From Ranitomeya imitator (taxonomy: Eukaryota), in the NCBI RefSeq assembly GCF_032444005.1, contig NC_091285.1, positions 646,350,001-646,414,000 on the forward strand: DNA of 64,000 bases, written 5' to 3'. The translations under genes and the position numbers were made by a program. Shown piece after piece: positions 13,700 to 60,539 of the stretch. Each line of letters begins with the position of its first letter. Position 1 is the first letter of the stretch. The notes below the pieces were generated by a model that ran no database searches, had not been told where the DNA came from, and worked only from the letters and a program-made list of their open reading frames with translations.

Positions 13700-16215
13700 G
13701 GTATAGGGGGCATCAGAGCGCTGCATGTCAGGGACAGGGGGCATCAGAGCGCTGCATGTCAGGGACAGGGGGCATCAGAGCGCTGCATGTCGGACAGGGG
13801 GCATCAGAGCGCTGCATGTCAGGGACAGGGGGCATCAGAGCGCAGCATGTCAGGGACAGGGGGCATCGGAGCGCAGCATGTCAGGGACAGGGGGCATCAG
13901 AGCGCTGCATGTCAGGGACAGAGGGCATCAGAGCGCTGCATGTCAGGGACAGAGGGCATCAGAGCGCAGCATATCAGGGACAGGGAGCATCAGAGCGCTG
14001 CATGTCAGGGACAGGGGGCATCAGAGCGCAGCATGTCAGGGACAGGGAGCATCAGAGCGCTGCATGTCAGAGACAGGGGGCATCGGAGCGCAGCATGTCA
14101 AGGACAGGGGGCATCAGAGCGCTGCATGTCAGGGACAGGGGGCATCAGAGTGCTGCAGGTCAGGGACAGGGGGCATCAGAGCGCTGCATGTCAGGGACAG
14201 AGGGCATCAGAGCGCTGCAGGTCAGGGACAGGGGGCATCAGAGCGCTGCATGTCAGGGACAGAGGGCATCAGAGCGCTGCATGTCAAGGACAGGGGGCAT
14301 CAGAGCGCTGCAGGTCAGGGACGGGGCATCAGAGCGCTGCATGTCAGGGACAGGGGGCATCAGGGCGCTGCATGTCAGGTACAGGGGGCATCAGAGCGCT
14401 GCATGTCAAGGACAGGGGGCATCAGAGCGCTGCAGGTCAGGGACGGGGCATCAGAGCGCTGCATGTCAGGGACAGGGGGCATCAGGGCGCTGCATGTCAG
14501 GTACAGGGGGCATCAGAGCGCTGCATGTCAAGGACAGGGGGCATCAGAGCGCTGCATGTCAGGGACAGGGGGCATCAGAGCGCTGCATGTCAGGGACAGG
14601 GGGCATCAGAGCGCTGCATGTCAGGGACAGGGAGCATCAGAGCGCTGCATGTCAAGGACAGGGGGCATCAGAGCGCTGCAGGTCAGGGACGGGGCATCAG
14701 AGCGCTGTATGTCAGGGACAGGGGGCATCAGAGCGCAGCATGTCAGGGACAGGGAGCATCAGAGCGCTGCATGTCAGGGACAGGGGGCATCAGAGCGCTG
14801 TATGTCAGGGACAGGGGGCATCAGAGCGCTGCATGTCAGGGACAGGGGGCATCAGAGCGCTGCATGTCAGGTACAGGGGGCATCAGAGCGCTGCATGTCA
14901 AGGACAGGGGGCATCAGAGCGCTGCAGGTCAGGGACGGGGCATCAGAGCGCTGTATGTCAGGGACAGGGGGCATCAGAGCGCAGCATGTCAGGGACAGGG
15001 AGCATCAGAGCGCTGCATGTCAGGGACAGGGGGCATCAGAGCGCTGTATGTCAGGGACAGGGGGCATCAGAGCGCTGCATGTCAGGGACAGGGGGCATCA
15101 GAGCGCTGCATGTCAGGTACAGGGGGCATCAGAGCGCTGCATGTCAAGGACAGGGGGCATCAGAGCGCTGCAGGTCAGGGACGGGGCATCAGAGCGCTGT
15201 ATGTCAGGGACAGGGGGCATCAGAGCGCAGCATGTCAGGGACAGGGGGCATCAGAGCGCAGCATGTCAGGGACAGGGGGCATCAGAGCGCTGCATGTCAG
15301 GGACAGGGGGCATCGGAGCGCAGCATGTCAGGGACAGGGGGCATCAGAGTGCAGCATGTCAGGGACAGGGGGCATCAGAGTGCAGCATGTCAGGGACAGG
15401 GGGCATCAGAGCGCTGCATGTCAGGGACAGGGGGCATCAGAGCGCTGCATGTCAGGGACAGGGGGCATCAGAGTGCAGCATGTCAGGGACAGGGGGCATC
15501 AGAGCGCAGCATGTCAGGGACAGGGGGCATCAGAGCGCTGCATGTCAGGGACAGGGGGCATCGGAGCGCAGCATGTCAGGGACAGGGGGCATCAGAGTGC
15601 AGCATGTCAGGGACAGGGAGCATCAGAGCGCTGCATGTCAGGGACAGGGGGCATCAGAGCGCTGTATGTCAGGGACAGGGGGCATCAGAGCGCTGTATGT
15701 CAGGGACAGGGGGCATCAGAGCGCTGCATGTCAGGGACAGGGAGCATCAGAGCGCTGCATGTCAGGGACAGGGGGCATCAGAGTGCAGCATGTCAGGGAC
15801 AGGGGGCATCAGAGCGCTGCATGTCAGGGACAGGGGGCATCAGAGCGCTGCAGGTCAGGGACAGGGAGCATCAGAGCGCTGCATGTCAGGGACAGGGGGC
15901 ATCAGAGCGCTGCAGGTCAGGGACAGGGGGCATCAGAGCGCTGCATGTCAGGGACAGGGGGCATCAGAGTGCAGCATGTCAGGGACAGGGGGCATCAGAG
16001 CGCTGCATGTCAGGGACAGGGGGCATCAGAGCGCTGCATGTCAGGGACAGGGGGCATCAGAGCGCTGCATGTCAGGGACAGGGGGCATCAGAGCGCTGCA
16101 TGTCAGGGACAGGGGGCATCAGAGCGCAGCATGTCAGGGACAGGGGGCATCAGAGCGCTGCATGTCAGGGACAGGGGGCATCAGAGCGCTGCAGGTCAGG
16201 GACAGGGGGCATCAG
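13700..16215. repeat. 31-bp minisatellite, about 81 copies (GGGGGCATCAGAGCGCTGCATGTCAGGGACA)
   Basis: Period 31 read directly (13741, 13772); explains three 800+ aa repetitive ORFs. Confidence 0.97.
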
Positions 16216-16424
16216 ATCAGAGGACCAGGGATTTGTTATTACTTGATTCCAGGATTTAGAGGACGAAACCAATAAACCTCGGACATGATGCGGGTCATTA
16301 CCCCCCAGCAGACACTATCTAATCTATGTCCCAGAACGTCCCCTGTGCAGTGGTACAGTCCGAGCTGCCACTGATCGATCTGCCAGCGCCAACCGACAGT
16401 CTATCAATCAGTAACCCACGATGC

Positions 16425-17831: not shown

Positions 17832-20800
17832 CTAATGTCCTTGGATTTTCAGCAGCAAAAAACGCATCCAATAATGATACCTGCGTTTTTGCTGCGTTTT
17901 TCTTTTTCAACAACCATTCAAGTCAATGGGTGAAACAAATGCAGCAAAAACGCTGAAAGAAGTGACAAGCTCTATGTCAAAAAAACGCAACAAAATACTG
18001 ATCAAACAAAAAACCAATGTGTGTGCATGAGATTTCTGAAATCTCATAGGCTTTGCTGGTGCTGTAAAAAGCAGCTGAAAAGTAGCATAAAAAAAGCAGC
18101 AAAAAGTCCTGTGTGAACATAGCCTTACAGTGAGGACGGTTATTGTTACATTATTTTCCACCTTTGTTAGAGAAGGAGCTATAATGTATCGGGGTCTGGG
18201 GAAGATGCATTGAGGGTCTTTCTTGCCCCCTGACAATGAGCGCCGTGCCGGGTGCTGCCGCTCATCCTCCTCTGCAATCCCCGGCACCTAAATATAGGTT
18301 TTCCCTGAAAATCCCTTTAACTAAAAGGCTGAGGACGGCAGCGGCTTATATAAAGCACCATAAGTGCTCCTAATGGGCGAGGGTCCGCAGGCTGCTCACA
18401 CTGGGGTCATACACGTGGGACCCGATCACTCGGCAGGTGACATGCCAGGGATCCATGGTGATGAGCAGGGCTGCGTGTCTTTGGGTGTGCCCGTAACGTG
18501 CCGCTGCCTGTCAGCCGGTCACATGGCAGCTGCCACATTACCCAGAAGGCGTCACTTTTACTCCTTTAGTGTTATTAGCCTTCGCTTTACTTGTATAATT
18601 ACTCTTTATTTGCTCCTTAAAGGGGAAGTCCGGCTCACATTGTTGATTTCTTGCGCCCCTTCTAGTTAGTGATGCAGCGATGTTTGCCATTTTGGATGGC
18701 TGAGGTTAGAACTAGAAATCCCCGATCCCCCTTTTCTGCGGTGTGACTTGCGCCCCCAATGGTGGGGTGCAGATGTGTCACCTGGCACTTTTCTACAGAG
18801 ACCTGCCTTTGGGTTAACATCTGTTATTTTTTGTCCATCCAGATTATCTAGTCCACGGCCAGTTTAAAGGCCTATTCACACTACCACATAGGGGCTGTAT
18901 TTTACTGCCTGTGTTACGGCCACAAGTGGTGTTGACCTTAAAGGGTTTTCCCAGGACTTTAACAGTGAGGACATATATTCAGAAGCATGGGGGTCTGAGC
19001 AGACCCCGCTACCGATCAGCTGATTGAGGCGGCATAGTGCCAGACAAGGTGTAGTGGCTATGAGTGGTACTGCAGCCTTGTGTGGGCTCACTATTCCAAT
19101 TTTCTGAAAACACAGTGATTTCTACCCCCTCCCCACCATGGACACAGCCTTAGCCTTTTCTATGTAACTTTCCGTCTTTCCCATCATACATGCATGTAAA
19201 TGAGGGTCCGGGGGTGCAGACTGCAGGGGGCACTGGTCTCCGGGCCGTGTAGGCAGCTGCCAGGCTGGTACAGTATGACTAATGTTGGCACGGGATTAGC
19301 CTCTGTTGTGTAGCGTTGTCCCGGGCGTGTGCGGCAGCTTGTAAATTCTCCCTGTGTCCTCTGTATACAGGACGGGGGCTGTGTCGGCCCCTCCTCGGGG
19401 CGATGCTTGGCGTTGTGGGTGGCACATGTAAGACGTCTTTTTACTTCTCCCCTTAGGCTTGTCTTTGGGCTGCTGTATCCCGCCTACTCATCATACAAAG
19501 CTGTGAAAACCAAGAATGTCCGAGAATACGTGAGTATCCGTAAAACAAAAGGCTGAGACATGGAGCCGTGCAATTTTTTTTTTTTTTCCAAAGCCAATAA
19601 CTTTTTTTTTTTTTAATTATTTATTTTTTTCCGTCGACAGCCATATGAGGGCTTGTTTTATGTTAAATTTTGAATTACACCTTTATAGTTGTCCACTACT
19701 TGCACATCTTCTCACACCCCTCGCTTGGCCTTGATGAAATAATAAAGCTTTTACTCCCTCCCATGTTGGGCTGTTCCCACAATGTTGTCACCTGCTCTCC
19801 CATTCCGTATTGTGATGCCGGAGCCCAATCAGCACTGGCGTCACTGTCTCCATCTTCGTACATATTGAACATGAAGAGAGTCTGGAATCAGCTGCATTGT
19901 GGACTTCCTCTTCATTCCGCATACTTCCATAACTGCACCGCACTGCCCAGCACATTGCAAATGGCCGACATTCACCTTCTTGTCTTCTCAGGTGCGATGG
20001 ATGATGTACTGGATCGTCTTCGCCCTCTTCATGACAGTGGAAACCTTCACAGACATTTTCCTCTCCTGGTAAGGGCTCTAAACTTTTATAGAGACTCTCC
20101 ATCTTGGAGACATATTACTGAATTCCATGACTTTAGTCTGGAACCTATGAGGAGTCCTCCGTACATCCAAAATTATTTATTAGGTCCCTGCTAATTTGGT
20201 GGTCCAAGAGGGTCTGCATACTAATGGGGCTTGAGCTACAGCTGCCTGTTCAGGTCCCAAACAGCGATTGTCAAGATTTGGTAGGGAACCTGTAACTATG
20301 CAGAGCGGCCAAAAGACACGCCCCCAGAGGATCCTGTGAGCCACGCCCCCAGAGGATCCTGTGAGCCACGCCCCCAGAGGATCCTGTGAGCCACGCCCCC
20401 AGAGGATCCTGTGAGCCACGCCCCCAGAGGATCCTGTGAGCCACGCCCCCAGAGGATCCTGTGAGCCACGCCCCCAGAGGATCCTGTGAGCCACGCCCCC
20501 AGAGGATCCTGTGAGCCACGCCCCCAGAGGATCCTGTGAGCCACGCCCCCAGAGGATCCTGTGAGCCACGCCCCCAGAGGATCCTGTGAGCCACGCCCCC
20601 AGAGGATCCTGTGAGCCACGCCCCCAGAGGATCCTGTGAGCCACGCCCCCAGAGGATCCTGTGAGCCACGCCCCCAGAGGATCCTGTGAGCCACGCCCCC
20701 AGAGGATCCTGTGAGCCACGCCCCCAGAGGATCCTGTGAGCCACGCCCCCAGAGGATCCTGTGAGCCACGCCCCCAGAGGATCCTGTGAGCCACGCCCCC

Positions 20801-23800
20801 AGAGGATCCTGTGAGCCACGCCCCCAGAGGATCCTGTGAGCCACGCCCCCAGAGGATCCTGTGAGCCACGCCCCCAGAGGATCCTGTGAGCCACGCCCCC
20901 AGAGGATCCTGTGAGCCACGCCCCCAGAGGATCCTGTGAGCCACGCCCCCAGAGGATCCTGTGAGCCACGCCCCCAGAGGATCCTGTGAGCCACGCCCCC
21001 AGAGGATCCTGTGAGCCACGCCCCCTTGTAAAGACAAAAATTAGCACTTAATAAAAAGGCCCATATCTCTGCCACATATTGTGGGTTTAAGAACAAACAA
21101 ACTGATTACTTGGAGAAGCATTGAGATTAGAAGTGTAAAAACCTGATCACTTTTGACTTGGTGACAACCGCTCTGTAAAGGGATTGTTGTGTGTTTTTTG
21201 TTTTTTTTTTTTTACAAAATATTGGCGTATGACCAGTTGATGATGACCTTGTCATACGTTATCTGCTGGTCTTCATTTTTAAATAAAGCATAGGAAATAC
21301 TGTGATTAAAGGGGTTGTATCGCTTATCCACTGGGTTGGTGAGAGTTGTATGATTGCCCCATTGACCACTGGGAGCCCCTCTGATTATGAGACTTATAGT
21401 CCCATGTGTGAGCAGTAGCGAGGATGTGCAACCACTGCTCCAGTCATACCCTATAGGAATGGTGGTCAGACATTGCCCCCAGCTGTGCTCTGCATCAGTG
21501 TGGGTCCCAGCAGGGGGCAACATCAGCGATTTACACTTTTTAACAGGGTTCTCCATTCTCGGAAGAAGAGTGACTGCAGACTGCTAAATTGTGAGAGTGC
21601 AATGTGCAGACTGTCATGATCCTGAGTGCAGGAGGCTGGGTGGTCATGTGCCAACTAGTCTCCTGCACTCAAGACTAGTCGGCACGTGACCGGACACGAT
21701 TACACCGTCTGCGGTCACACTGTGCCTGCAGGCTCTTCTGCTGAGACCAGATAATCCCTATAACTGAACATCCCCCGCTGTTCTTGTTTTGCTCTTTTCA
21801 CTCATTCTTGCTTTTTTTTTTTTCCTGGACAGGTTTCCATTTTACTATGAGATTAAGATGGCCTTTGTGGTGTGGCTGCTGTCCCCGTACACACGAGGCG
21901 CCAGCCTACTGTACAGGAAGTGTGTGCATCCTGTGCTGTCCCTGCGGGAAAAGGTACCGATTACTGTATGTGTGTCTCCATTCCTGTGTGTGCTGCGTAC
22001 AGAGATAAGGAGCAGTCGTCCTATGCAGGATCCATACAGGACGGGGGTCTTGTCTCTGATAATCCCTGATGTATAGAGGGGCTGGGATAGCAGTGAGGAG
22101 CAAGCATCGCTCCGCCGTCACTGCTCATTACTGCTCCGCCATCACTGCTCCCACACGGTGGAGGGGGGAGCGCTGGTTACACGGTGGAGGGGGGAGCGCT
22201 GGTTACACGGTGGAGGGGGGAGCGCTGGTTACACGGTGGAGGGGGGAGCGCTGGTTACACGGTGGAGGGGGGAGCGCTGGTTACACGGTGGAGGGGGGAG
22301 CGCTGGTTACACGGTGGAGGGGGGAGCGCTGGTTACACGGTGGAGGGGGGAGCGCTGGTTACACGGTGGAGGGGGGAGCGCTGGTTACACGGTGGAGGGG
22401 GGAGCGCTGGTTACACGGTGGAGGGGGGAGCGCTGGTTACACGGTGGAGGGGGGAGCGCTGGTTACACGGTGGAGGGGGGAGCGCTGGTTACACGGTGGA
22501 GGGGGGAGCCCTGGTTACACGGTGGAGGGGGGAGCCCTGGTTACACGGTGGAGGGGGGAGCGCTGGTTACACGGTGGAGGGGGGAGCGCTGGTTACACGG
22601 TGGAGGGGGGAGCGCTGGTTACACGGTGGAGGGGGGAGCGCTGGTTACACGGTGGAGGGGGGAGCGCTGGTTACACGGTGGAGGGGGGAGCGCTGGTTAC
22701 ACGGTGGAGGGGGAGCGCTGGTTACACGGTGGAGGGGGGAGCGCTGGTTACACGGTGGAGGGGGGAGCGCTGGTTACACGGTGGAGGGGGGAGCCCTGGT
22801 TACACGGTGGAGGGGGGAGCCCTGGTTACACGGTGGAGGGGGGAGCGCTGGTTACACGGTGGAGGGGGGAGCGCTGGTTACACGGTGGAGGGGGGAGCGC
22901 TGGTTACACGGTGGAGGGGGGAGCGCTGGTTACACGGTGGAGGGGGGAGCCCTGGTTACACGGTGGAGGGGGGAGCCCTGGTTACACGGTGGAGGGGGGA
23001 GCCCTGGTTACACGGTGGAGGGGGGAGCGCTGGTTACACGGTGGAGGGGGGAGCGCTGGTTACACGGTGGAGGGGGGAGCGCTGGTTACACGGTGGAGGG
23101 GGGAGCGCTGGTTACACGGTGGAGGGGGGAGCGCTGGTTACACGGTGGAGGGGGGAGCGCTGGTTACACGGTGGAGGGGGAGCGCTGGTTACACGGTGGA
23201 GGGGGAGCGCTGGTTACACGGTGGAGGGGGGAGCGCTGGTTACACGGTGGAGGGGGGAGCGCTGGTTACACGGTGGAGGGGGGAGCGCTGGTTACACGGT
23301 GGAGGGGGGAGCGCTGGTTACACGGTGGAGGGGGAGCGCTGGTTACACGGTGGAGGGGGGAGCGCTGGTTACACGGTGGAGGGGGGAGCGCTGGTTACAC
23401 GGTGGAGGGGGAGCGCTGGTTACACGGTGGAGGGGGAGCGCTGGTTACACGGTGGAGGGGGAGCGCTGGTTACACGGTGGAGGGGGGAGCGCTGGTTACA
23501 CGGTGGAGGGGGGAGCCCTGGTTACACGGTGGAGGGGGGAGCCCTGGTTACACGGTGGAGGGGGGAGCCCTGGTTACACGGTGGAGGGGGGAGCCCTGGT
23601 TACACGGTGGAGGGGGGAGCCCTGGTTACACGGTGGAGGGGGGAGCCCTGGTTACACGGTGGAGGGGGGAGCCCTGGTTACACGGTGGAGGGGGGAGCGC
23701 TGGTTACACGGTGGAGGGGGGAGCGCTGGTTACACGGTGGAGGGGGGAGCGCTGGTTACACGGTGGAGGGGGGAGCGCTGGTTACACGGTGGAGGGGGGA

Positions 23801-26800
23801 GCGCTGGTTACACGGTGGAGGGGGGAGCGCTGGTTACTTGGGGGTTACTGGTTTCATGGGGGAGGGGCTCTGTTTGCATGAGTGAGGTAGTAACGCGGTG
23901 AAGGTGAGATAATTACTTTTATTTTTCTTTCCCATTGATTTTTCCTACTATTCCCAGCGTAGCGAGTGTTGGTTGTCTGGGCATGTTGGTACTTGTGGTT
24001 CCTATGATGTGTTCATCTGCTCTGCCCCGAGGCGGCCGTTGGATTCCACAAGCTGCATCTGTCCTGACCGGTTTCTTACCTCACAGAGCAGCTGCCGGCA
24101 GAGTCTGTGCGGTGAATCCCTCGCGGTGAATCCCTCGGTATCTCCTCCTGGCGCCTCCTCGCTGCTCCTCTGACCTACATCTTATTTCTTCCACCAGGAA
24201 ATAGACTCCTACATTGTGCAGGCCAAGGAGCGGAGCTACGAGTCGGTGGTCACGCTCGGGCGGAAAGGTCTGAACATAGCGGCTACCGCGGCCGTACAAG
24301 CCGCCACCAAGGTACCGACACTGGTGGGAAATGTGTTCTATGGCGGTGCCATAAGTGTGTACAGTGCAGGAAGAGGTTGGTACACAAAATGAGAATGCTT
24401 GGTCTGGGGGAAAATGTGTGTAAATGGGTTAGTAACTGGCTTAGTGATAGAAAGCAGAGGGTGGTTATAAATGGTATAGTCTCTAACTGGGTCGCTGTGA
24501 CCAGTGGGGTACCGCAGGGGTCAGTATTGGGACCTGTTCTCTTCAACATATTCATTAATGGTAGAAGGTTTACACAGTAAAATATCGATATTTGCAGATG
24601 ATACAAAACTATGTAAAGCAGTTAATACAAGAGAAGATAGTATTCTGCTACAGATGGATCTGGATAAGTTGGAAACTTGGGCTGAAAGGTGGCAGATGAG
24701 GTTTAACAATGATAAATGTAAGGTTATACACATGGGAAGAAGGAATCAATGTCACCATTACACACTGAATGGGAAACCACTGGGTAAATCTGACAGGGAG
24801 AAGGACTTGGGGATCCTAGTTAATGATAAACTTACCTGGAGCAGCCAGTGCCAGGCAGCAGCTGCCAAGGCAAACAGGATCATGGGGTGCATTAAAAGAG
24901 GTCTGGATACACATGATGAGAGCATTATACTGCCTCTGTACAAATCCCTAGTTAGACCGCACATGGAGTACTGTGTCCAGTTTTGGGCACCGGTGCTCAG
25001 GAAGGATATAATGGAACTAGAGAGAGTACAAAGGAGGGCAACAAAATTAATAAAGGGGATGGGAGAACTACAATACCCAGATAGATTAGCGAAATTAGGA
25101 TTATTTAGTCTAGAAAAAAGACGACTGAGGGGCGATCTAATAACCATGTATAAGTATATAAGGGACAATACAAATATCTCGCTGAGGATCTGTTTATACC
25201 AAGGAAGGTGACGGGCACAAGGGGGCATTCTTTGCGTCTGGAGGAAAGAAGGTTTTTCCACCAACATAGAAGAGGATTCTTTACTGTTAGGGCAGTGAGA
25301 ATCTGGAATTGCTTGCCTGAGGAGGTGGTGATGGCGAACTCAGTCGAGGGGTTCAAGAGAGGCCTGGATGTCTTCCTGGAGCAGAACAATATTGTATCAT
25401 ACAATTAGGTTCTGTAGAAGGACGTAGATCTGGGGATTTATTATGATGGAATATAGGCTGAACTGGATGGGCAAATGTCTTTTTTCGGCCTTACTAACTA
25501 TGTTACTATGTTACTATTACACGGAGCTGGAAATGTCTCTTCACCCCCCGCACCTGTGCAGGGAATTCGGGACCGATGGTTCCATCTATGAGAGCACTGC
25601 GGGGTATTAGGCGATGTCCCTGGCACTACAGAGGGGCACGTGACAGGAACACGGAATGAATAATGTCTGTATAATATATATGGGTTGATCTCTGTAGGGA
25701 CAAGGCGCGCTGGTCGGACGACTCCGCAGCTTCAGCATGCAGGATCTGAGGGATCTCCCAGATGACGCCCCCATACACTACAGAGATCCCCTGTACCCTG
25801 ATGCTGAGCTTCAACGCCGCCCTATTGGTGAGTTGTTGTATTTTTTTTTTGTAATCTATAAATGTTTGGGGGTTTTATTCTACCTAAAGGGGACAATTTA
25901 TTTTGGGGCTAAAAAAATCATTTTTGCTGGTTCGTTTAATTAATCTTTTTGCACCGCTTGCCTTCTACATCCTCCATGTTACTGTTTCTTGCCGGCTGCG
26001 GAATGAGCTAACTGAGACTCCATCAGTCAACTCGCTATGACCGTCTGACAGGGAGTTTGTGTTGTATCTGCCTGTTTCTGAGCTCCTCTCAGCTGATGCT
26101 AATGTGACGGGAAACAAATCTGCTGTAAAAGCTAAATTGTGCAAGATGTTTCATTAAACCCAGTTCCTAAATTATGGCTTGTTTGTTTTTTAGCCCCAAA
26201 TACATGGATTTAAGGAAAAACATTATTGTCCCCAAAGGTGGACAACCCGTGTAATGTCTGCAAACCCTTCTCCCCCAGGTTACACAACTCAGTCCCAAGT
26301 CGACAGTGACTCCATGGATGAAAGATGGTCCGACAATGAAAGCCGGACGTCGGCAAGAACCAGAGGGGGTCTACCACCCAAACCAATGCAGAGGAGCCAG
26401 AGTCTGAGGGTGTCTAAGAAGAAGACGCTAAGCAGAGAGGTGAGGGTTAATCCCGACCTGGCGGCGTAGGGAAATTATCACATGTATGAGGGCGGGATTT
26501 TTTCAGAACGAGTTGTACTTTTCAAATGGCACCATTCATTTTATCATGTGATGCACTGAAAAGCGGGGAAAAAATTCCAATTTTGGTGAAATTACAAAGA
26601 AAAAGTCCAGTTCCACAATTGTTTTTCGTTTGTGCAATACCACCTCAAAATCAGGGGGCCGGCATATGTCGGTAAAGGGGGGTGGGTGATTCCGCAGCAC
26701 CCATGGCGTCTGCATCAGTGGGTGATTCCGCAGCACCCATGGCGTCTGCATCAGTGGGTGATTCCGCAGCACCCATGGCGTCTGCATCGGTGGGTGATTC

Positions 26801-27567
26801 CGCAGCACCCATGGCGTCCGCATCGGTGGGTGATTCCGCAGCACCCATGGCGTCCGCATCGGTGGGTGATTCCGCAGCACCCGTGGCGTCTGCATCGGTG
26901 GGTGATTCCGCAGCACCCATGGCGTCCGCATCGGTGGGTGATTCCGCAGCACCCATGGCGTCTGCATCAGTGGGTGATTCCGCAGCACCCATGGCGTCTG
27001 CATCAGTGGGTGATTCCGCAGCACCCATGGCGTCTGCATCAGTGGGTGATTCCGCAGCACCCATGGCGTCTGCATCGGTGGGTGATTCCGCAGCACCCAT
27101 GGCGTCCGCATCGGTGGGTGATTCCGCAGCACCCATGGCGTCCGCATCGGTGGGTGATTCCGCAGCACCCATGGCGTCTGCATCGGTGGGTGATTCCGCA
27201 GCACCCATGGCGTCCGCATCGGTGGGTGATTCCGCAGCACCCATGGCGTCCGCATCGGTGGGTGATTCCGCAGCACCCATGGCGTCCGCATCGGTGGGTG
27301 ATTCCGCAGCACCCATGGCGTCCGCATCGGTGGGTGATTCCGCGGCACTGACATGGCGTCCGCATCTGTGCGTGATTCCGCGGCACTGACATGGCGTTCG
27401 CATCTGTGGGTGATTCAGTAGCACCTATGGCGTCCGCATCTGTGGGTGATTCTGCAGCACTGACATGGCGTCCGTCCTCACCACCTCTCCTCTCCTTACA
27501 GGCCTCTGTCCGGAGCAGCAAATCCCGAGCAAAGAAGAAGGTGGTGCAGTCTGAATCAGAAATGTGA
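16580..27567 (+). CDS. REEP4: Receptor expression-enhancing protein 4, 257 aa, 8 coding exons
   Basis: Exons 16580-16611, 19457-19529, 19992-20068, 21833-21953, 24198-24311, 25698-25827, 26279-26439, 27502-27567; all GT-AG with consistent phases, 774 nt. [45 protein letters not shown]..., [17 protein letters not shown]. Paralog assignment supported by the NUDT18/FHIP2B neighbours. Confidence 0.95.
16690..17205. mobile_element. PIF/Harbinger-type MITE in REEP4 intron 1
   Basis: TIR GGCCTCTTTCACACTTCAGT at both ends, TAA target duplication (16687-16689, 17206-17208), nine internal CGGATCCG palindromes. Confidence 0.85.
17745..18124. mobile_element. PIF/Harbinger-type MITE in REEP4 intron 1
   Basis: TIR GG(G/C)TA(A/T)GTTCACACAGGACTTTT, TTA duplication (17742-17744, 18125-18127). 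Confidence 0.8.
20317..21025. repeat. 25-bp minisatellite, about 28 identical copies (CACGCCCCCAGAGGATCCTGTGAGC), REEP4 intron 3
   Basis: Period 25 read directly; no variant units seen. Confidence 0.97.
22153..23837. repeat. 26-bp G-rich minisatellite, about 65 copies (ACACGGTGGAGGGGGGAGCGCTGGTT), REEP4 intron 4
   Basis: Period 26, with 25-bp (G5) and GCCC variants. Confidence 0.97.
24376..25516 (+). mobile_element. CR1 LINE 3' fragment in REEP4 intron 5
   Basis: [10 protein letters not shown] and FADDTKL, frameshifted RT C-terminus, 3' tail of repeated CTATGTTA. Confidence 0.9.
26682..27475. repeat. 36-bp minisatellite, about 22 copies (GTGGGTGATTCCGCAGCACCCATGGCGTCYGCATCR), REEP4 intron 7
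   Basis: Period 36 (26682, 26718); degenerates toward the exon 8 acceptor. Confidence 0.95.
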
Positions 27568-34856: not shown

Positions 34857-35990
34857 TCATAACCCTATTACACATACTGTCCACATACTTTTGGACCAGT
34901 GTGTGTGTATAAAAAAAAAAAAAATTATTATTCTTAACCGGGGAAAAGGAGGTGATTTTTATTTATTTTTTTTTGTAGATTTTAAAAACTGATAACCACT
35001 TGATTATGTCTGATATTCCCGGCTACCAATCTGTGTTTTTTTGTATGGAACTTTTACAAATGGTAAATGTTAGTGTTTACTGCCGAGGAGCTAAACCTGC
35101 TGAGCCGGTAATGATTGCCGTACCGAGGCCGCCTGCAATATGGCAGCTGCAGGTGACTGGCATCAGCCGCCCAGGGGGAAAGTGCATGAGATGTTAATAT
35201 GTTACTTTTAGGTGACCGATGTGAACTTCTTTTGACTTTTGTAAAAAAAAAAAAAAAAAAAAAGAGGTTCTGCAGCAGATGAGGTCTGCACATGATTCCA
35301 CACTGTGGCCTGTGTTACTACTGCGCCATTCGTTTCCATGAGGCCGCAGTCTCCATTGTAGCGTAACTTATATTTGCCTCCTGTGCACTTTCGTCTCTGT
35401 TGTTCTCCCCCTGCGGATACCTGTGAGTCACCGGTCTAAGAACGGTAATATTACAGGGGTTTTCTGGTTTAAAGTTGCAGTTGTTTAAAAGAAAACATAT
35501 TTCTTTCTCACCCTCCCCGGGTCCAACACTGAGTTCCTGCTGCTACTCCCGGTCCTGCTGACAGCACTGCAGCCAATCGGTGATCGCAGCAGCTCGTTCC
35601 CATCCCACCGCGTTCAGCGCTGAGACATTACACACCAGCAGTAGTGGAGATTCAGTGCTGGACCTGGTGACGGTGAGTAGAGCACAGTGGTTTTTTTTTT
35701 TTTTAACTGCAGCCGGTGTGCAGGCCTTTCTCTAAAACCAGAAAGCCTTTTAAGGCTGCTGCACCCTTGGTGATTTTTTCCGACACCCCATGTACAGTCC
35801 GTTCAGCCCAGCACGCACGACTTCTCATTGTGGACTGAGCACTGACACCACTGCGGCCGCGGCTCATTTATAGAAGAAATAATCCGGTGTGTTTACATAC
35901 AATGTTCTGATCCTTCTTTCCTCGACATTTGCCGTCTGGTGAGATGCGGGTACCTCCATAAACACTGAATAGGTGACGGGTTCTGAGTAA

Positions 35991-36311
35991 GGGTATGTGC
36001 ACACGTTGTGGATTTCCTGCGGATCCGCAGCGGTTTTTACCGTGCAGAAAAGCAGATCCGCAAGGGATTTACAGTACAATGTAAATCAATAGGAAAAAAA
36101 ACCCGCTGTGCTAATGGTGCGGAAACGCTGCGGATTAAAAGTAGCATGTCACTACTTTTTTGCGGATCTGCAGCGCTTTTGTACCCATTCCATTATAGAA
36201 ATCCGCACAGAATGCTGTAAATCCGCACAAAAACGCATCAAATCCACACCTGCGTTTTCTGCCAAGAGATGCAGAATCTGCACAAAAAATTCCAGAGGCA
36301 AATCCGCAACG
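35991..36311. mobile_element. Truncated Harbinger-type MITE
   Basis: TAA|GGGTATGTGCACACG start resembling the TIR family at 17745; right TIR missing. Confidence 0.5.
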
Positions 36312-36409
36312 TCAGCGGGTGCAGCCGGCATCTATCCGCACCCAGGCTTGGTAAGCCGAGCTGGGAGGTCGGTGGGATGTCCTAGTCTCAACTGTATCTG
36401 TGTCCTTGG

Positions 36410-37415
36410 GACTTGTCTGGGTGGCCACCAGGGGGCAGCAGTGTGTGTGTACACAGACTAGGGGCAGTAAGATGTGTCTGGGTGGCCACCAGGGGGCAGC
36501 TGTGTGTGTGTACGCAGACTAGGAGCAGTAAGATGCGTCTGGGTGGCCACCAGGGGGCAGCTGTGTGTGTGTACGCAGACTAGGAGCAGTAAGATGCGTC
36601 TGGGTGGTCACCAGGGGGCAGCAGTGTGTGTGTACACAGACTAGGGGCAGTAAGATGCGTCTGGGTGGCCACCAGGGGGCAGCTGTGTGTGTGTACGCAG
36701 ACTAGGAGCAGTAAGATGCGTCTGGGTGGCCACCAGGGGGCAGCAGTGTGTGTGTACGCAGACTAGGGGCAGTAAGATGCGTCTGGGTGGTCACCAGGGG
36801 GCAGCAGTGTGTGTGTACGCAGACTAGGAGCAGTAAGATGCGTCTGGGTGGTCACCAGGGGGCAGCAGTGTGTGTGTACGCAGACTAGGAGCAGTAAGAT
36901 GCGTCTGGGTGGTCACCAGGGGGCAGCTGTGTGTGTGTACGCAGACTAGGAGCAGTAAGATGCGTCTGGGTGGCCACCAGGGGGCAGCAGTGTGTGTGTA
37001 CGCAGACTAGGGGCAGTAAGATGCGTCTGGGTGGTCACCAGGGGGCAGCAGTGTGTGTGTACGCAGACTAGGAGCAGTAAGATGCGTCTGGGTGGTCACC
37101 AGGGGGCAGCAGTGTGTGTGTACGCAGACTAGGAGCAGTAAGATGCGTCTGGGTGGTCACCAGGGGGCAGCAGTGTGTGTGTACGCAGACTAGGGGCAGT
37201 AAGATGCGTCTGGGTGGTCACCAGGGGGCAGCAGTGTGTGTGTACGCAGACTAGGAGCAGTAAGATGCGTCTGGGTGGTCACCAGGGGGCAGCAGTGTGT
37301 GTGTACGCAGACTAGGGGCAGTAAGATGCGTCTGGGTGGTCACCAGGGGGCAGCTGTGTGTGTGTACGCAGACTAGGGGCAGTAAGATGCGTCTGGGTGG
37401 CCACCAGGAGGCAGG
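36410..37415 (+). repeat. 61-bp tandem array, 17 units, each with a CTCF-consensus-like motif
   Basis: GTGG(C/T)CACCAGGGGGCAGC every 61 bp from 36421 to 37397. Confidence 0.95.
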
Positions 37416-37574
37416 AGTGTGTGTGGCTTGCCATTAGGGGGCACTACGATGTGTGGGGTCTGTGGAGGCAGTATAGTGTGTGGGTGATACACGGTATGGG
37501 GCTGTGGGGGCATTATGTGAGGCATAAGTGGCATCTCGCTGTGGGGGGAGCACTAGGCGCCATTTCTGTGTGGG

Positions 37575-37577
<3 letters not shown>

Positions 37578-37607
<30 letters not shown>
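37578..37607. repeat. (TA)n microsatellite
   Basis: About 15 TA units. Confidence 0.95.
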
Positions 37608-37859: not shown

Positions 37860-38040
37860 CGCCAATCAGCACTTGAGGCCGGATGAGCAGCGACCAATGG
37901 GAGCCGGGAGCAGCCTGCCCAGTACTTCCTGCTTTGGAGAGAGACATGAGGAGGTATTAGGATAGGATGAGACAGCTGAGACTGCAGCGCTGCCACCTGT
38001 CACTCCCCGGCTCCTGTGGGACTACAACTCCCAGCATTGA
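37860..38040 (+). promoter_or_regulatory. Likely NUDT18 promoter / non-coding first exon region
   Basis: CCAAT at 37862 and 37894, ETS ACTTCCTG at about 37924, ZNF143-type ACTACAACTCCCAGCA 38021-38036. The ATG exon is preceded by an acceptor (TTTCAG 38324-38329), implying an upstream exon. Confidence 0.55.
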
Positions 38041-38331
38041 GCACTCTGAGCTGTATACCATACAGTGTGGCCAGGGTTGTCACCCAGCTTTCCCCTGATT
38101 GTGGATGTATTACAGCACAGATTGCCAATCAGGGGTCTGGGAAAGCTGAGTGACAAGTCATCGTGGGCGCAGGAGACGACTCCAGAGGCCTATGGGCGAC
38201 AGGTGATCCGGGGATCTTTCCCGCGGAGTCTCTTTCTGTCCTGAGGACAAGCAGCGCCGCAGCAGCTGCAGTCGCTTTTCTATAAACTAGTGAATGTTTC
38301 CTAATTCTCGTGTTCTCCTTGTGTTTCAGAC

Positions 38332-40659
38332 ATGTCTCGTCGTCTGGAGGAGGAGCTGACGATTCTCTTAGACGGAGGCGCCGTCCCGCTCCCGGACAAG
38401 TGTGATGTGGCCCCCGAGAGCCCGCGGCCCCTGAGACTAAAGCACAATGTGTGCTACATCGTCGTGGGCATCCTACTGAACGACCAGGTGAGGGCGCCAC
38501 ATACACCGCGCCCACGCCTCACTCACTGCCAGATTTCACTTTTCTGCTATAAATTATTTATTTTTATTTTTTTTAGTTTATTAAAGTTTTTTTTGGGCAT
38601 ATAATTCTCTATTGAACTGGTAAGGATTGCTAGAGAGCGCTGTTACCTCCTAATCCCGGTCACCTTCACAGCAGTGCTTACGAGCTACGCTGCAGAGGTG
38701 GTCGGTCTCCTAGGCAACCAGCTATAAGCAAAGGAAAAATGGTAATCTCTCCAGAACGGCTGCAAATTTTAACAAGCAGTAAATTGCAAAAGTGTTTGTC
38801 TTTACAAGCGCTATCCGAAAATATCCATATATATGAACTTTGGAATAACCCTTTAATTTTCTTACTAAATAGCACGTGCCTTTTGAGCAAAATCAGACAT
38901 CCACCAAGTGGTGGTCTGGTTACAAGTCATTATCCGGAGGATCTGACCGCAGGGACCCCCAACAATTGGAAGAATGAATAATTTATATCCCCGATGTGAC
39001 ACTTCTCCCCGTTACACGGCAGCGTGGTGGGACGGATCGGTGATCGAGGAAGTTGCCCGTTCTGCCGATCACTGCAGGTCCCAGCGGTCGGACCCCCCCT
39101 CGATCGTAGACTGTTATGTTGTCAGTTCTTCAGATGAACAGCCCACCTTATAAACCTGTGACCTTCCCTGCAGGATGAGGTGCTGATGATGCAGGAGGCC
39201 AAGGCGGAGTGCCGCGGGAGATGGTACCTTCCGGCTGGGCGGCTGGAGAGGGGGGAAAGTCTGGTGGACGGTCTGTGCAGGGAGGTGGCGGAGGAGACCG
39301 GACTTCTGTGCCAACCCCTGACCCTGCTGCTGGTAGAAGAGCGAGGCGCCTCCTGGGTTCGCTTTGTCTTCCTCGCTCAGGAGACAGGTCGGTGTCCGGT
39401 TCTTGTCTTTAATTCACAGACCGTATGGTGTATTTAAAGGGGCACCATGACGGCAACGACGAGACGCCTTTAATGGATGCTTGTGCCATTATATGTCCTG
39501 TACAGATGTACCCCTGCTAAAATCCACAAATTATCCTACACATTTTCTACTTATCTACAGGACCAGTGTTAATTGTATAAACCCTGAGGGTATTGGACCC
39601 CCATAATTATCCAAGGACAGGGGTCCCGAGCCTCCATGCTGCACTAACAGTGATGTGAGGTCCCGCTCCATGCAATGTTCGAGGGGCTGATGGACACAGC
39701 AGAGCACTGGACTCGGCCATCTCCTTCAGTCCTAGTCATGTGCATGCGCGATCTCCGCTCCTAGTTACTGATTGGCTGCAGTACCTGAGAACGGCCACTA
39801 CACCGCGTATGGCGCTGTGCTGATCCCGCCATAAGCGCTGCGTATGTCCATCTGCCGCGGATCAGCGAGTGCCGGATTCCCGCCGATCTGCCATGATGAA
39901 GCATCCAGAGGGTCGTATTAATGACTTTACTGAGGAATATACAAGTCCTGGACAACCCCTTTAATTTAAAAAAATGCCCCTATGGGCAGTCCTCAGTAAG
40001 GTCATTAATATACAAGTCCTGGAAAACCCGTTTAAATACTGAGGACTGCCCATAAGGGCATTTTTTTTTTATTTTATTTTTTAACACTGATCACTCTTTT
40101 TTTTTCTGCAGGTGGAGTTCTGAAATCGTCTGCCTCAGCCGACAAAGAATCTCTGCAGGCGTCATGGTGGGACAGAGTGTCTCAGCTGCCCCTGCGCTGC
40201 AGAGACATCCTTCCTCTCATCCAGCGTGCCTTGGACTACCGCCGCCTGCCCTCACATCCATCTATCCTGCCCCAGTTGTGCCCATCTCCCTTCCTAGTCC
40301 TGCGACTGCTCCTGGTGTGCATCGTTTCCGGAGAGATCCAGATCCTACAAAGCTCCGCTGATTCGGCACGTCTTCCCACCATTGTCTGCGACGCGCGTCG
40401 TGGCGGTGGTAGCATCCTCAATCCATTGTTTTATCTGTTGCACGATGCGTACATGTCATGCGGTATCTTAGGAGTTCAGCATCAAGGTGGGGATGACGCG
40501 GACGGAGTGTGTTTCAATATAATGGGGGTCTTGCATGATTGTGAACTGCCTGTGGTCCGAACAGGGGGTCTCAGCTGGGTAGCGGTTGAGGATGAAGCTC
40601 TGAAGAACAGACTGGAGCAAGTGATGAAGAACAACACAATGCTGCCCTTATGTAGCTGA
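38332..40659 (+). CDS. NUDT18: Nudix hydrolase 18 (8-oxo-dGDP phosphatase, MTH3), 305 aa, 3 coding exons
   Basis: Exons 38332-38487, 39174-39387, 40112-40659 (918 nt). Intact Nudix box [23 protein letters not shown]; [34 protein letters not shown]. Confidence 0.93.
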
Positions 40660-41987
40660 GTCTCCGAGCCAAGAACTATGAATAGATGGATGCAGGCAAA
40701 CCTCATCACCTGTCTGCCATAACATTAAAACTCTCATATCGCCAACTCTGGTCTGACCCATCAAGGCACGGACGGAGCACCCCAAGATATTAGCGGCAGA
40801 TCCTAGAAGTCCTGTACGTTGCTCGGTTTGGCCACCATAGACAGGACTTGTTTTCCAGCAGATCCCACAGATAGGACTGAGATCTGGGGGATTTGGAAAC
40901 CAGTCATAACCTTGCTCTCTCTGGACAAGGTAAATGGTCACACCCAGTTGCCAATTTATTCATTTTCTGCCTGATAGAAGTGGGTTAAAGGACACCTGAG
41001 CTTGAGATAGGTGCACTTCCTAATGATAAGAACCACATTTATGGCAAGTCCTGTAATATATTCCATAAATGACTAAGGAATATCCCTTTAAGAAGGACCT
41101 GTCACTTGCCCTGAATCCGGCACTATTTTTCTTTTGTTCCTGCGCCTCTCCGTTCCTGAGATATGGCCTCCTCTTCCCTGTATATAAATCTAGTCTTTTT
41201 ATCCAAGTGGGTGTGGTCCTCTACTCTATGGGCGTTGTCTTCTTGAAGATCACACCCACATGGCTAGCAAGTTTAGATTTTTATACAGGTAAAAAGAGGC
41301 CATATCTCAGGAACGGAGAGGCGCAGAAACGAAAGAAAAACAGCGCCGCGTTCAGGAGAACAGCGGGCATTAAACCAGGTGGAAAAAAAACATTGCTGTC
41401 TAGTGACAGATACTCATCACTGTGGCTCCCATCCTGCAATATGGCCATATTCACGAGCTGTGCACGCACACAGGACTTAGTATTTGCCTAAATCCTGCCA
41501 CCGTGGCATGTGAATAGGAAGATTTGTGCCGTATGGACGCGTTTGGAAATCCACAATCCCTTGTAGGAAAGCCACCGATTAGCTCCACGAAATTACGACG
41601 GAGCAGATTATCCGCAAAACTGCCGCAGGATTTGGCCATTGTAAATCCTCATCGGGAGGACACGGCCTACGTGTGGCCGATGTTACAGCCCGGCTTTCCG
41701 GTGAGCTGCTGTAAATCACAATGTGCCATATATCGGAAGATGTATGCCGTACTGGTGTACTGGCGATGGTCAGTCCTGGCAGCACTATATGGACTGGTGC
41801 GTGCAAGAAACCATCGCCAGTCTGTGCACGTCCTCGTGTCGTGCCTCGTTCTGCAATATCTCCCCACCGCTTTGTTGCACTTTCATGTATAAATGTGCCA
41901 TTCATGTATGCGGGAACGCCCCCCGAAAATTGCACAAGATTGTGTTATGTCTCCCATCATCTGCCTTGTCACAAATAAAGATCATTA

Positions 41988-43567: not shown

Positions 43568-45049
43568 TATGTCTCGTCAAAAGTGACCAGCGAGTAATGC
43601 TTCACTATGCCGCCCCCATTACAGTGGGATCCCCCTATTATTAGTATTAGGGCCCCATCCACATTAGGCTGACGTTGGCCTACCCGCTGATATCCGGGGA
43701 TTCGGCTGCCAGTCCTACCTCCGCGCCCCCCCAACAGCCATCTCTCCCGGCTCCCCCATCAGACAAGCGTTCCCCAGACTCCTGTGATGGCGGCTTATCA
43801 CAGAGGATCGGCAGTCCGAAGTCAGAGACCCGGGATCCTTCTCTTCCCGGACAGTCGAGGCGGGAGCCGCACCGTACACATTAGACCGTCCGCCGAACCC
43901 GCTGATAGTCAGCCTAAAGTGTATGGGGGTCTCCCGGCTCTCACAGATAATGTCAAAGGAACTAAGTATGGGGGAGTTAGGATTTTAACATCCAACCTTT
44001 TTATTATATATAATCCGCTGCCCTATGGAAACACAAGAACGGTCGACAACGCGGGAGAAATGGCCGCCGGCCGAATGTGTAGGCAGCCCCCTGCAGTAAG
44101 GGCTGGTTGTTGGGGGGTCCTACGCAATAATCCGATCCGACAAACTTTCCACCTGATTTTTCGTACTCGGCAAACCCTTTAATTGACTAGGTCCAGGTAT
44201 CGGGACCCCCAATAATCGAGCAACAGGCCCACGAGAAGAGCGACAGGAACAGATCCGGCCTGAATAGAAAGCGTGGTCTCCGTAGTTTCCCATCTGCTAA
44301 GCTGCGATCATTGGGGGTCTTTAAACCCAGCCTCCCCCCCTGAACTGTGGGAAATACATTTTGTTACCAACCAGGAGCCATACTGGAAACACGACAGGAA
44401 GCAGAGCCTAATAGTGGTCACTAGGGGGCGACACGGGACAGTATTTTTCTTTATAGCCCCCCATTATCCAGCGTGGGGCCTATTTTCCGGCTCTCATAGA
44501 TTTCAGATGTTTTCTGGCTCCACCAATTCTACTCACTTGCCCCATAAATAACAAATAGAAGCCGCCGATAATAATTGATAATTAGGAATCTTTTTTTATT
44601 TCCGTGTCAGACGACGGCTGGAGAAACAAAATCCTCATAAACACATTTAATGTACATGGAGCAAAGAGGGGCTCGAAGGAAGGACGGAAGGGGTTAAAAG
44701 AGCGCGGTACCTCCGAAAGCAAAAATGTCCAAACTGATGGTTGGCGATTGATAAGCGGCCCACCCAAAAAACACTGCAAGACACAACACCGGGGGATGAT
44801 CCTGAGAACCAAAGACTCCGCAGCACCTACCGGAGCAGCCACCAGGGGGCAGAAGAGACGTGGACCCGATTATTAGGAAAAGGCCATAAAGTGATCAGAC
44901 TGCTGCAAACAAACTAGAAGAGGCGCTGCTCCTCCGAGCTCCAGAAATAAGGCACGGATGGGTTAAAAAAAAAAAAGACGAGCCCCCCACAAAGGAGGCG
45001 TTCGCGCTATTGCACTTGGATTCATGGCTTTTTCCATGTGTCCTTAGGG

Positions 45050-60539
<15,490 letters not shown>

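What the first reader, a model, noticed from the sequence alone, without database searches (positions are those of the whole stretch)
36410..37415. Tandem array of 17 co-oriented CTCF motifs directly upstream of NUDT18: a candidate repeat-built super-insulator
Seen: every 61-bp unit contains TGG(C/T)CACCAGGGGGCAGC; 7 units have GGCC (the last is degenerate) and 10 have GGTC, all pointing toward NUDT18/FHIP2B; the core has no CpG. The second half-unit (CAGACTAGGRGCAGTA) looks like a decayed copy of the same motif. Known: the CTCF consensus is TGGCCACCAGGGGGCGCTA, so GGCC units match its first 15 positions; clustered directional sites make strong cohesin barriers. Inference: minisatellite expansion amplified one CTCF site into a copy-number-variable, methylation-insensitive boundary between a transposon-rich interval and a housekeeping promoter, at the position HR occupies in mammals.
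Basis: partly seen in the sequence, partly recalled or inferred. Interest (0 to 1): 0.8.

Follow-up and report, generated by a model that had tools for sequence, protein, structure and literature searches.

The report
Minisatellite of CTCF-type motifs upstream of NUDT18
A frog gene (NUDT18) has, about 0.5 kb upstream of its transcript start, a real 1-kb tandem repeat whose 17 units each carry a strong match to the binding motif of the genome-folding protein CTCF. It looks like an ordinary repeat expansion in repeat-dense DNA, and its proposed role as a "super-insulator" is plausible but untested.

Summary
A 61-bp unit repeats 16.6 times at 36415-37425. All 17 units carry a forward CTCF-type motif: 6 exact GGCC, 1 degenerate and 10 GGTC. 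The motif core has no CpG. The array ends 531 bp before the 5'-most NUDT18 RNA evidence.

A composition- and oligomer-aware null gives about 1e-4 or less per array. The 14-mer core of the GGCC units is identical to a DNA that recombinant CTCF ZF3-7 binds at about 98 nM (PMC11880201).

What I add:
- An 18th site lies in a diverged edge unit.
- The array is one of 11 minisatellites that cover 21% of the window, the frog "extended subtelomere" type of landscape.
- Unit variants show exchange between units and no sign of constraint on the motif.
- The majority C>T variant weakens the CTCF match and creates a perfect GLI consensus.

The scan's earlier notes (unchecked here) list many other CTCF-motif arrays with unrelated units in this genome, so this one is not a locus-specific invention.

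Verdict: a real array that is competent for CTCF binding and arose by ordinary minisatellite dynamics. Occupancy, insulation, copy-number variation and selection remain untested.

The parts
36415..37425 (+). 61-bp x 16.6 minisatellite. The + strand is G-rich (consensus unit G25 C11 A13 T12). Each unit holds a forward CTCF-type 19-mer, a 14-bp alternating purine-pyrimidine tract ((GT)5 then ACGC) and a second half of the form CAGACTAGGRGCAGTAAGATG.
   Evidence: TRF; units in register and their variable columns; half-unit patterns found only here in the window.
36422..36440 (+). First of 6 GGCC units (motif starts 36422, 36483, 36544, 36666, 36727, 36971). They score 22.0-24.8 bits and contain the exact 14-mer CCACCAGGGGGCAG.
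   Evidence: The same 14-mer is bound by CTCF ZF3-7 in EMSA, KD 98 nM, in PMC11880201.
36605..36623 (+). First of 10 GGTC units (motif starts 36605, 36788, 36849, 36910, 37032, 37093, 37154, 37215, 37276, 37337). They score 17.6-20.3 bits.
36601..36609 (-). First of 10 exact GLI consensus 9-mers (GACCACCCA). The GGTC variant creates them, and each overlaps positions 1-5 of the CTCF 19-mer.
   Evidence: 13 in the window against 0.92 expected; 10 in the array. Consensus taken from the PMC2830928 abstract.
37398..37416 (+). 17th, degenerate motif (GGCC form with GGAGG), 19.4 bits.
37426..37577 (+). Diverged 3' tail of older, roughly 30-bp G-rich units. Its first segment carries an 18th CTCF-type motif at 37428-37446 (18.5 bits) and resembles both halves of the 61-mer.
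   Evidence: TRF finds no array here.
37578..37607 (.). (TA)15 microsatellite between the array and the promoter.
37956..38199 (+). 5'-most NUDT18 exon seen in RNA contigs, 531 bp downstream of the array end.
   Evidence: records 18 and 23. The 38200-38326 stretch is absent from X3 record 18 (no joint row is listed for it) and present in X6 record 24.
38327..38487 (+). NUDT18 exon with the start codon at 38332.
   Evidence: joint 38484>39171, GT..AG.
39171..39384 (+). NUDT18 NUDIX exon.
   Evidence: Pfam NUDIX 7e-12; human NUDT18 3GG6 at E=2.7e-28; joints.
40109..40800 (+). NUDT18 last exon. It continues beyond the stretch that was laid.
   Evidence: records 21 and 29.
35990..36320 (.). Very high-copy MITE-like repeat about 100 bp upstream of the array. 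The 5' edge of the array is sharp, with no unit-like flank.
   Evidence: Word depth about 2e5 against about 9 for single-copy DNA; flank alignment no better than shuffles.
44415..44433 (+). Lone forward CTCF-type motif, 18.4 bits, between or inside the 3' ends of NUDT18 and FHIP2B.
44836..44854 (+). Lone forward CTCF-type motif, 21.4 bits. It shares the 15-mer GCCACCAGGGGGCAG with the array but nothing else.

Best explanation
This is a minisatellite made by unequal exchange and slippage in minisatellite-dense frog DNA. It amplified a sequence that already was a genuine CTCF-type site.

Shown:
- The tandem structure.
- The strength and single orientation of the motifs.
- Mosaic unit variants, which indicate exchange between units.
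- A sharp 5' edge and a decayed 3' edge.
- The position 0.5 kb upstream of the NUDT18 transcript start.

Inferred:
- The array can bind CTCF, because the same core binds in vitro in the literature.
- In cells it is probably occupied at only some units at a time. Seventeen sites at 61-bp spacing leave no room for nucleosomes.
- As a redundant forward-oriented site, it would stall cohesin arriving from the NUDT18 side. It would act as a promoter-proximal anchor or a left-hand domain border.
- I see no evidence that copy number or motif quality is under selection. 'Super-insulator' is therefore a possibility, not a finding.
For: - Structure.
- Motif strength: 6 strict-consensus hits against 0.01 expected; all units score 17.6-24.8 of 26.2 bits.
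- Chance: unit shuffles reach 17.6 bits or more at about 1e-4 and 20.3 bits or more at about 2e-5. Markov nulls trained on the window's other arrays give 3-6e-4, 7.5e-5 or less, and 0 of 120000 at 24.8 bits or more.
- Binding competence: the canonical motif is printed in PMC10589630. The identical 14-mer core is bound by CTCF ZF3-7 at 98 nM (PMC11880201). The mammalian motif is convergent at Xenopus TAD borders, and CTCF and Rad21 are needed for those TADs (PMC8270788).
- Ordinary-minisatellite context: 11 arrays cover 13.3 kb of the 64 kb. This matches the frog extended-subtelomere landscape, which has recombination-linked minisatellites rich in TGGG and AGGG and arises in animals without PRDM9 (PMC10794172). 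The array holds TGGG 17 times and AGGG 23 times.
- Exchange between units: all four combinations occur for each pair of columns 11, 26 and 49.
- No constraint: 2 of 5 variable columns lie in the motif, and the majority allele weakens it.
- Promoter distance.
Against: - There are no occupancy, accessibility, methylation or contact data for this species, so binding in vivo is unproven.
- Exact 31-mers of the array occur in runs of five other organism labels. That could mean conservation, which would favour function, or a multi-copy family, which would favour ordinary repeat DNA. I could not tell which.
Its consensus agrees with the printed one.
- Many other arrays in this genome are noted as CTCF-like. 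If that is verified, the recurrence itself needs an explanation that pure neutrality does not give.
Confidence: 0.55

Rival explanations
1. The array is a selected, copy-number-variable, methylation-insensitive multi-site CTCF/cohesin barrier that shields the NUDT18/FHIP2B housekeeping domain from the transposon-rich interval on its left.
For: - All 18 motifs face the genes.
- The core is CpG-free.
- The left interval holds an L2-type LINE, two Ty3 copies and many arrays.
- Three further strong lone motifs in the window are also forward (28939, 44415, 44836).
- Array words are shared with other species labels.
- Arrays of CTCF-binding sites do insulate in the literature (STITCH, PMC7200164), and synthetic tandem arrays show robust CTCF occupancy at every position (PMC13701538).
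Against: - The majority variant degrades the motif, and variation is not depleted inside it.
- The array sits among 10 other minisatellites with no CTCF likeness.
- No reverse-oriented strong partner lies within the 27 kb to the right.
- Copy-number variation and insulation were not tested.
Confidence: 0.15
2. Silent repeat. The CTCF likeness is a by-product of the G-rich cores (AGGGGGCA, TGGG) that frog minisatellites favour. In vivo the array is nucleosomal, methylated or heterochromatic, and CTCF does not bind it.
For: - The heptamer GGGGGCA occurs 98 times on the + strand, mostly in this array and the 31-bp array at 13705-16216.
- The region is a minisatellite field.
- CpG observed/expected in the array is only 0.40-0.44, as expected for methylated DNA.
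- The same units also match another zinc-finger consensus, GLI, perfectly. This shows how easily G-rich repeats mimic such motifs.
Against: - Even oligomer-aware nulls give 0 of 120000 units at 24.8 bits or more.
- The exact core binds CTCF in vitro.
- The core lacks the CpGs through which methylation blocks CTCF (established knowledge).
- The array lies beside an active promoter.
Confidence: 0.2
3. Promoter-proximal VNTR acting through other factors. The 10 GGTC units form a cluster of perfect GLI/ZIC sites that overlap and compete with the CTCF sites, or the Z-DNA-prone (GT)5ACGC tracts modulate NUDT18 transcription. The human INS VNTR is a comparable case (from my own knowledge).
For: - Ten exact GACCACCCA sites (consensus).
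- The array is 531 bp from the transcript start.
- Some RNA-like runs hold array words.
Against: - An 18-bit hit to one of hundreds of known factor motifs in a 61-bp unit is about what chance gives (roughly 0.4 expected, my estimate).
- NUDT18 is not a known Hedgehog target.
- No RNA contigs lay on the array in the two RNA runs that were laid.
Confidence: 0.05

Closest known systems
Frog extended-subtelomere minisatellites (Bredeson et al. 2024, PMC10794172)
   Same: - Tandem arrays of tens of base pairs.
- G-rich and rich in TGGG and AGGG.
- Densely packed in GC-richer, recombination-prone DNA.
- Thought to expand by unequal crossing over in animals that lack PRDM9.
- Different arrays arise in different frogs.
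   Different: That paper does not describe arrays whose unit is a CTCF motif. I also could not establish that this window lies within the terminal ~30 Mb of its chromosome.
CTCF-bound macrosatellites DXZ4, ICCE and FIRRE, and the 1q23.3 tRNA VNTR (PMC3218863, PMC6125249, PMC5899087, PMC4041453)
   Same: - Tandem repeats in which every unit carries a CTCF site in one orientation.
- The orientation of the array controls long-range contacts (Dxz4).
- Copy number varies.
   Different: - Those units are 3-7 kb with room for nucleosomes, and binding is epigenetically controlled.
- Here the unit is 61 bp, so the sites nearly abut.
- Occupancy here is unknown.
- There is no sequence relationship.
Clustered or synthetic tandem CTCF sites as insulators (STITCH, PMC7200164; synthetic arrays, PMC13701538; clustered CTCF at TAD borders, PMC6945661)
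   Same: Several same-orientation, high-affinity, CpG-free sites in a row. Engineered arrays of CTCF sites block enhancer contact (STITCH), and synthetic tandem arrays show robust occupancy at each position (PMC13701538).
   Different: Engineered and natural clusters have a handful of sites spaced by hundreds of base pairs. This array has 17-18 sites in 1 kb produced by repeat expansion.
Human HRNR VNTR with predicted CTCF sites (PMC10234305)
   Same: A repeat expansion multiplies predicted CTCF sites, and site number scales with repeat length. The effect on folding is conjectural.
   Different: The HRNR repeat is coding and its matches are weaker (P<1e-4 to the two-core motif). Here the array is non-coding, promoter-proximal and near-consensus.
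Other CTCF-motif arrays noted by this scan in the same genome (for example s1-288135, followed up by another agent)
   Same: The same genome, the same pattern of co-oriented strong CTCF-type motifs in a minisatellite near a promoter or in an intron. The follow-up verdict was the same: ordinary expansion, insulator role untested.
   Different: The units and periods are unrelated (26, 32, 57 bp and others). That array was traced to a dispersed hairpin repeat. For this one I found no dispersed source inside the window.

Membership tests
Vertebrate CTCF binding site | Match to the 15-19-bp core motif (CCASYAGRKGGCRSY / TGGCCACCAGGGGGCGCTA) | tested here: met
   Six strict-consensus hits against 0.01 expected. 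All 17 units score 17.6-24.8 of 26.2 bits (matrix from memory, consensus confirmed in print).
Vertebrate CTCF binding site | Binding by CTCF zinc fingers in vitro | not testable with these tools
   Literature only. A 17-mer holding the identical 14-mer CCACCAGGGGGCAG is bound by recombinant CTCF ZF3-7, KD 98.4 nM (PMC11880201). The GGTC form has not been tested anywhere that I found.
Vertebrate CTCF binding site | Occupancy in vivo (ChIP, CUT&RUN or footprint) | not testable with these tools
   I could not tell whether any listed run is a ChIP-type library: library fields are blank and names coded. Short reads would also be ambiguous inside the array.
CTCF/cohesin insulator or TAD border | Local minimum of contact insulation, or a loop anchor | not testable with these tools
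   No Hi-C or Micro-C access.
CTCF/cohesin insulator or TAD border | Convergent partner motif downstream | tested here: inconclusive
   No minus-strand motif of 16.3 bits or more lies in the 27 kb to the right. The strong lone sites are all forward. A partner could lie beyond the window.
CTCF/cohesin insulator or TAD border | Retention of the sites in related species | tested here: inconclusive
   Organism B has both flanks, in the pieces listed roughly 90-97% alike, and contigs only on units 2-3. Five other labels hold 6-12% of the array words. No contig bridges the array.
Frog recombination-associated minisatellite | Head-to-tail units longer than 10 bp, 5 or more copies, high identity | tested here: met
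   61 bp x 16.6, 96% matches.
Frog recombination-associated minisatellite | G-rich, with the TGGG, AGGG and ACAG tetramers reported for frog subtelomeric arrays | tested here: met
   TGGG 17 times and AGGG 23 times on the + strand, none on the minus strand. ACAG only 2 times on the + strand and 5 on the minus strand. Consensus unit composition G25 C11.
Frog recombination-associated minisatellite | Lies in DNA dense with other, unrelated arrays | tested here: met
   Eleven arrays, 13,290 bp, 20.8% of the window.
Frog recombination-associated minisatellite | Signs of exchange between units (mosaic variants) | tested here: met
   All four allele combinations occur for each pair of variable columns 11, 26 and 49.
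Frog recombination-associated minisatellite | Copy-number polymorphism; position in the terminal ~30 Mb | not testable with these tools
   Contigs collapse the array. The chromosome length is unknown. The window starts at or beyond 633.7 Mb.
CTCF macrosatellite (DXZ4 type) | Kilobase-sized unit with one CTCF site per unit | tested here: not met
   The unit is 61 bp. This is an analogue, not a member.
GLI/ZIC site cluster | Exact GACCACCCA consensus | tested here: met
   Ten exact sites in the GGTC units. Their significance is doubtful once one allows for the number of known motifs.

The most novel reading that the evidence does not exclude
In this frog genome, minisatellites whose unit is a strong CTCF motif form a recurrent class that has arisen many times from unrelated units of 26, 32, 57 and 61 bp and others.

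One possible cause is that CTCF-bound, nucleosome-free sites are preferred places of breakage and unequal exchange in PRDM9-less amphibians, so CTCF sites seed minisatellites. Another is that arrays of CpG-free CTCF sites are selected as robust borders in a giant, transposon-laden genome.

The NUDT18 array would be one instance. Its shared words in five other species labels would then reflect an old, maintained element.
Probability: 0.2. Interest if true: 0.75.

Novelty: new member of a known kind. Interest (0 to 1): 0.38.

Why it matters
On its own, this is a clean natural example of repeat expansion multiplying one high-affinity, CpG-free CTCF site 17-fold next to a housekeeping promoter. 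That makes it a ready-made test of how many closely packed sites CTCF and cohesin can use. It also allows a test of whether the C>T change at motif position 4 matters for binding.

The larger point is the recurrence. If a census confirms that CTCF-motif arrays are over-represented among frog minisatellites, it would link genome folding, PRDM9-independent recombination and satellite birth. I found no paper on this in the searched library.

Tried and rejected
- Direct comparison of the two half-units. Global and local alignments are no better than shuffles. Only the diverged edge unit links them.
- A source for the unit. The 5' flank has no unit likeness. There are no other copies of either half in the window at up to 3 mismatches. 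The metagenome scan for a 26-mer found 0 hits. The scan's sequence look-up was blank.
- TRF at low threshold on the 3' tail found no periodic array.
- Rfam found no RNA family anywhere in the window.
- The bacterial promoter and terminator scan is irrelevant for a vertebrate and I ignored it.
- CTCF likeness of the window's other 10 arrays. There is none: the best is 8.5 bits for the consensus unit at 60787 (up to 10.6 bits in individual copies) and the rest are 2.6 bits or below. CTCF likeness is therefore not a general property of this window's arrays.
- Copy number from contig depth. Array bins show a depth of 6-31 against about 9 for single-copy DNA. Every 31-mer spans a variable column, so unitigs are very short and probably dropped. 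I draw no conclusion from this.
- Canonical G-quadruplex. The G-runs in a unit are separated by a 25-nt loop, so I rejected this as a main feature (by inspection).

Full report
**1. The observation**

The sequence at 36415-37425 is a head-to-tail array of a 61-bp unit: 16.6 copies, 96% matches and no indels. Six are exact GGCC forms, one is degenerate (37398) and ten are GGTC. The 19-mer contains no CpG in any unit. Each unit has two CpGs outside it.

**2. Is the motif match more than chance?**

- The strict degenerate CTCF consensus hits six times in 64 kb, all in the array, against 0.01 expected.
Its consensus equals the canonical motif printed in PMC10589630.
- With that matrix the units score 24.8 bits (three units), 22.0 (three), 20.3 (eight), 17.6 (two) and 19.4 (the degenerate one). 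The maximum is 26.2, and 16.3 bits corresponds to p<1e-6 per position.
- The copies are not independent, so the real question is how often a minisatellite unit looks like this.
- Shuffling the eleven array units of the window gives 17.6 bits or more at about 1e-4 and 20.3 bits or more at about 2e-5.
- Markov models of order 1-3 trained on the other ten arrays keep their G-rich oligomers. They give 3-6e-4, at most 7.5e-5, and 0 of 120000 at 24.8 bits or more.
- One amplified unit is therefore a real, strong CTCF-type site. In a multi-gigabase genome with very many arrays, a few such cases could still arise by chance.

**3. Binding competence**

This part comes from the literature and was not tested here.

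- The 14-mer CCACCAGGGGGCAG of the GGCC units is identical to the core of a 17-mer that recombinant CTCF ZF3-7 binds with KD 98.4 nM (PMC11880201).
- In Xenopus tropicalis the mammalian motif is convergent at TAD borders, and CTCF and Rad21 are required for TADs (PMC8270788).
- From established knowledge, a forward motif stalls cohesin that arrives from its 3' side.
- Also from knowledge, a CTCF footprint of roughly 40-50 bp would allow neighbouring 61-bp sites to be filled, but only on nucleosome-free DNA. Simultaneous full occupancy is unlikely.

**4. Surroundings**

- NUDT18 is confirmed by a Pfam NUDIX hit and human NUDT18 3GG6 at E=2.7e-28.
- Spliced RNA contigs define exons at 37956-38199, 38327-~38487 (start codon at 38332), 39171-39384 and 40109 onward.
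- The array ends 531 bp upstream of the 5'-most RNA evidence and 907 bp upstream of the start codon.
- FHIP2B exons (RAI16-like) lie on the minus strand, tail-to-tail with NUDT18.
- The left 36 kb holds an L2-type LINE, two Ty3 copies and a very high-copy MITE that ends about 100 bp from the array.
- The window also holds ten other minisatellites with periods of 21-103 bp. Together with this one they cover 13.3 kb, or 20.8% of the window.
- This is the landscape described for frog extended subtelomeres: recombination-linked arrays rich in TGGG and AGGG, in animals without PRDM9 (PMC10794172). The array has TGGG 17 times and AGGG 23 times on its G-rich strand.
- None of the other ten arrays resembles CTCF.

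**5. Anatomy and history of the array**

- Only five columns vary (11, 26, 39, 49, 61). Columns 11, 26 and 49 show all four pairwise combinations, which is the signature of exchange or conversion between units.
- Two of the five variable columns lie inside the 19-mer, against 1.6 expected. The majority allele at column 11 (T in 10 of 16 units) lowers the CTCF score by about 4.5 bits. I see no purifying selection on the motif.
- The 5' edge is sharp. The 3' edge decays into about 150 bp of diverged G-rich units.
- The first of those diverged units carries an 18th CTCF-type motif (18.5 bits).
- That same unit resembles the first half-unit at 16 of 20 positions (8 of 2000 shuffles as good). It resembles the second half-unit at 12 of 14 positions (14 of 2000).
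- The two halves compared directly share only GGGGCAG, which is not significant.
The support is indirect.

**6. A caution and a rival**

The C>T change that makes GGTC units also creates TGGGTGGTC, the exact reverse complement of the GLI consensus GACCACCCA (PMC2830928). Ten such sites lie in the array. The whole window has 13 against 0.92 expected. Given the hundreds of known motifs, one 18-bit hit in a 61-bp unit is about what chance gives. It still shows how readily G-rich repeats mimic zinc-finger sites, and GLI and CTCF sites here would overlap.

**7. Other individuals and species**

- In the DNA run of a related organism (B), the pieces listed on both flanks are roughly 90-97% alike. Only the bin holding units 2-3 (the GGCC type) is covered, and no contig bridges the array.
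- Searching with the array alone, runs of five other organism labels hold 6-12% of its sampled 31-mers. Three of those runs are tiny, at 8-15 million letters. Several RNA-like runs of the same species hold 15-48%.
- The two RNA runs I laid had no contig on the array.
- This leaves three open possibilities: the unit is multi-copy in relatives, it is conserved, or it is transcribed somewhere.

**8. Recurrence in this genome**

These are the scan's own notes, unchecked here. They are leads, not support.

- Fifty notes in 754 windows mention CTCF. Many describe co-oriented arrays of CTCF-type motifs with unrelated periods, often next to promoters.
- One array (s1-288135) was followed up by another agent. 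Its verdict was the same as mine: a real array, an ordinary expansion, and an untested insulator role.
- By my per-array chance estimates, that many strong arrays in about 48 Mb would be an excess. I could not verify their strength.
- I found no paper describing such arrays in amphibians.

**9. Verdict**

- The motif reading, the orientation and the CpG-free core are right, and binding competence is plausible.
- Insulation, copy-number variability, methylation insensitivity in vivo and selection are untested.
- The internal evidence points to neutral minisatellite dynamics.
- The closest functional analogues are the CTCF-bound macrosatellites and engineered tandem CTCF arrays. By membership it is a frog-type minisatellite that happens to carry, and multiply, a CTCF site.

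Noticed in passing
window 36601-37341, minus strand, 10 sites: The GGTC units contain the exact GLI consensus GACCACCCA, overlapping the 5' end of the CTCF motif. The window has 13 exact sites against 0.92 expected.
   Followed up: partly
window 36415-37425 against public runs: RNA-like runs of the same species hold 15-48% of the array's sampled 31-mers. Very small DNA runs (8-15 M letters) of other species labels hold 6-12%. This suggests transcription of the array, or a multi-copy family in relatives.
   Followed up: no
window 28939, 44415, 44836 (+ strand): Three lone strong CTCF-type motifs (17.5, 18.4 and 21.4 bits), all in the same orientation as the array. No minus-strand motif in the window reaches 16.3 bits; about 0.13 motifs of that strength are expected by chance over both strands.
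   Followed up: partly
window 13705-16216, 20317-21025, 22153-23837, 26681-27474, 48650-48966, 51229-52048, 54012-54423, 55341-57399, 58355-60316, 60787-61795: Ten further minisatellites with periods of 21-103 bp and up to 81 copies. With the array they make up 20.8% of the window. The 31-bp array at 13705 shares the AGGGGGCA core with the NUDT18 array but has no CTCF match.
   Followed up: partly
window 35990-36320: MITE-like repeat with a contig word depth of about 200,000 against about 9 for unique DNA. That implies tens of thousands of copies, and the depth is equally high in the related organism B.
   Followed up: no
window 36417-36431 and the other GGCC units: The GGCC units contain the near-palindrome CTGGgTGGCCACCAG, with one bulged G. 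The GGTC variant breaks it.
   Followed up: no
window 38200-38326: A stretch in the NUDT18 5' UTR that is absent from one RNA contig (X3 record 18) and present in another (X6 record 24), as an optional intron would be. No joint row is listed for it.
   Followed up: no
window 3816-6755 and 7496-11737 (minus strand): Two Ty3-type retroelement copies with long open gag-pol frames. Each carries the same 14.4-bit CTCF-like 19-mer (3846 and 8828).
   Followed up: no
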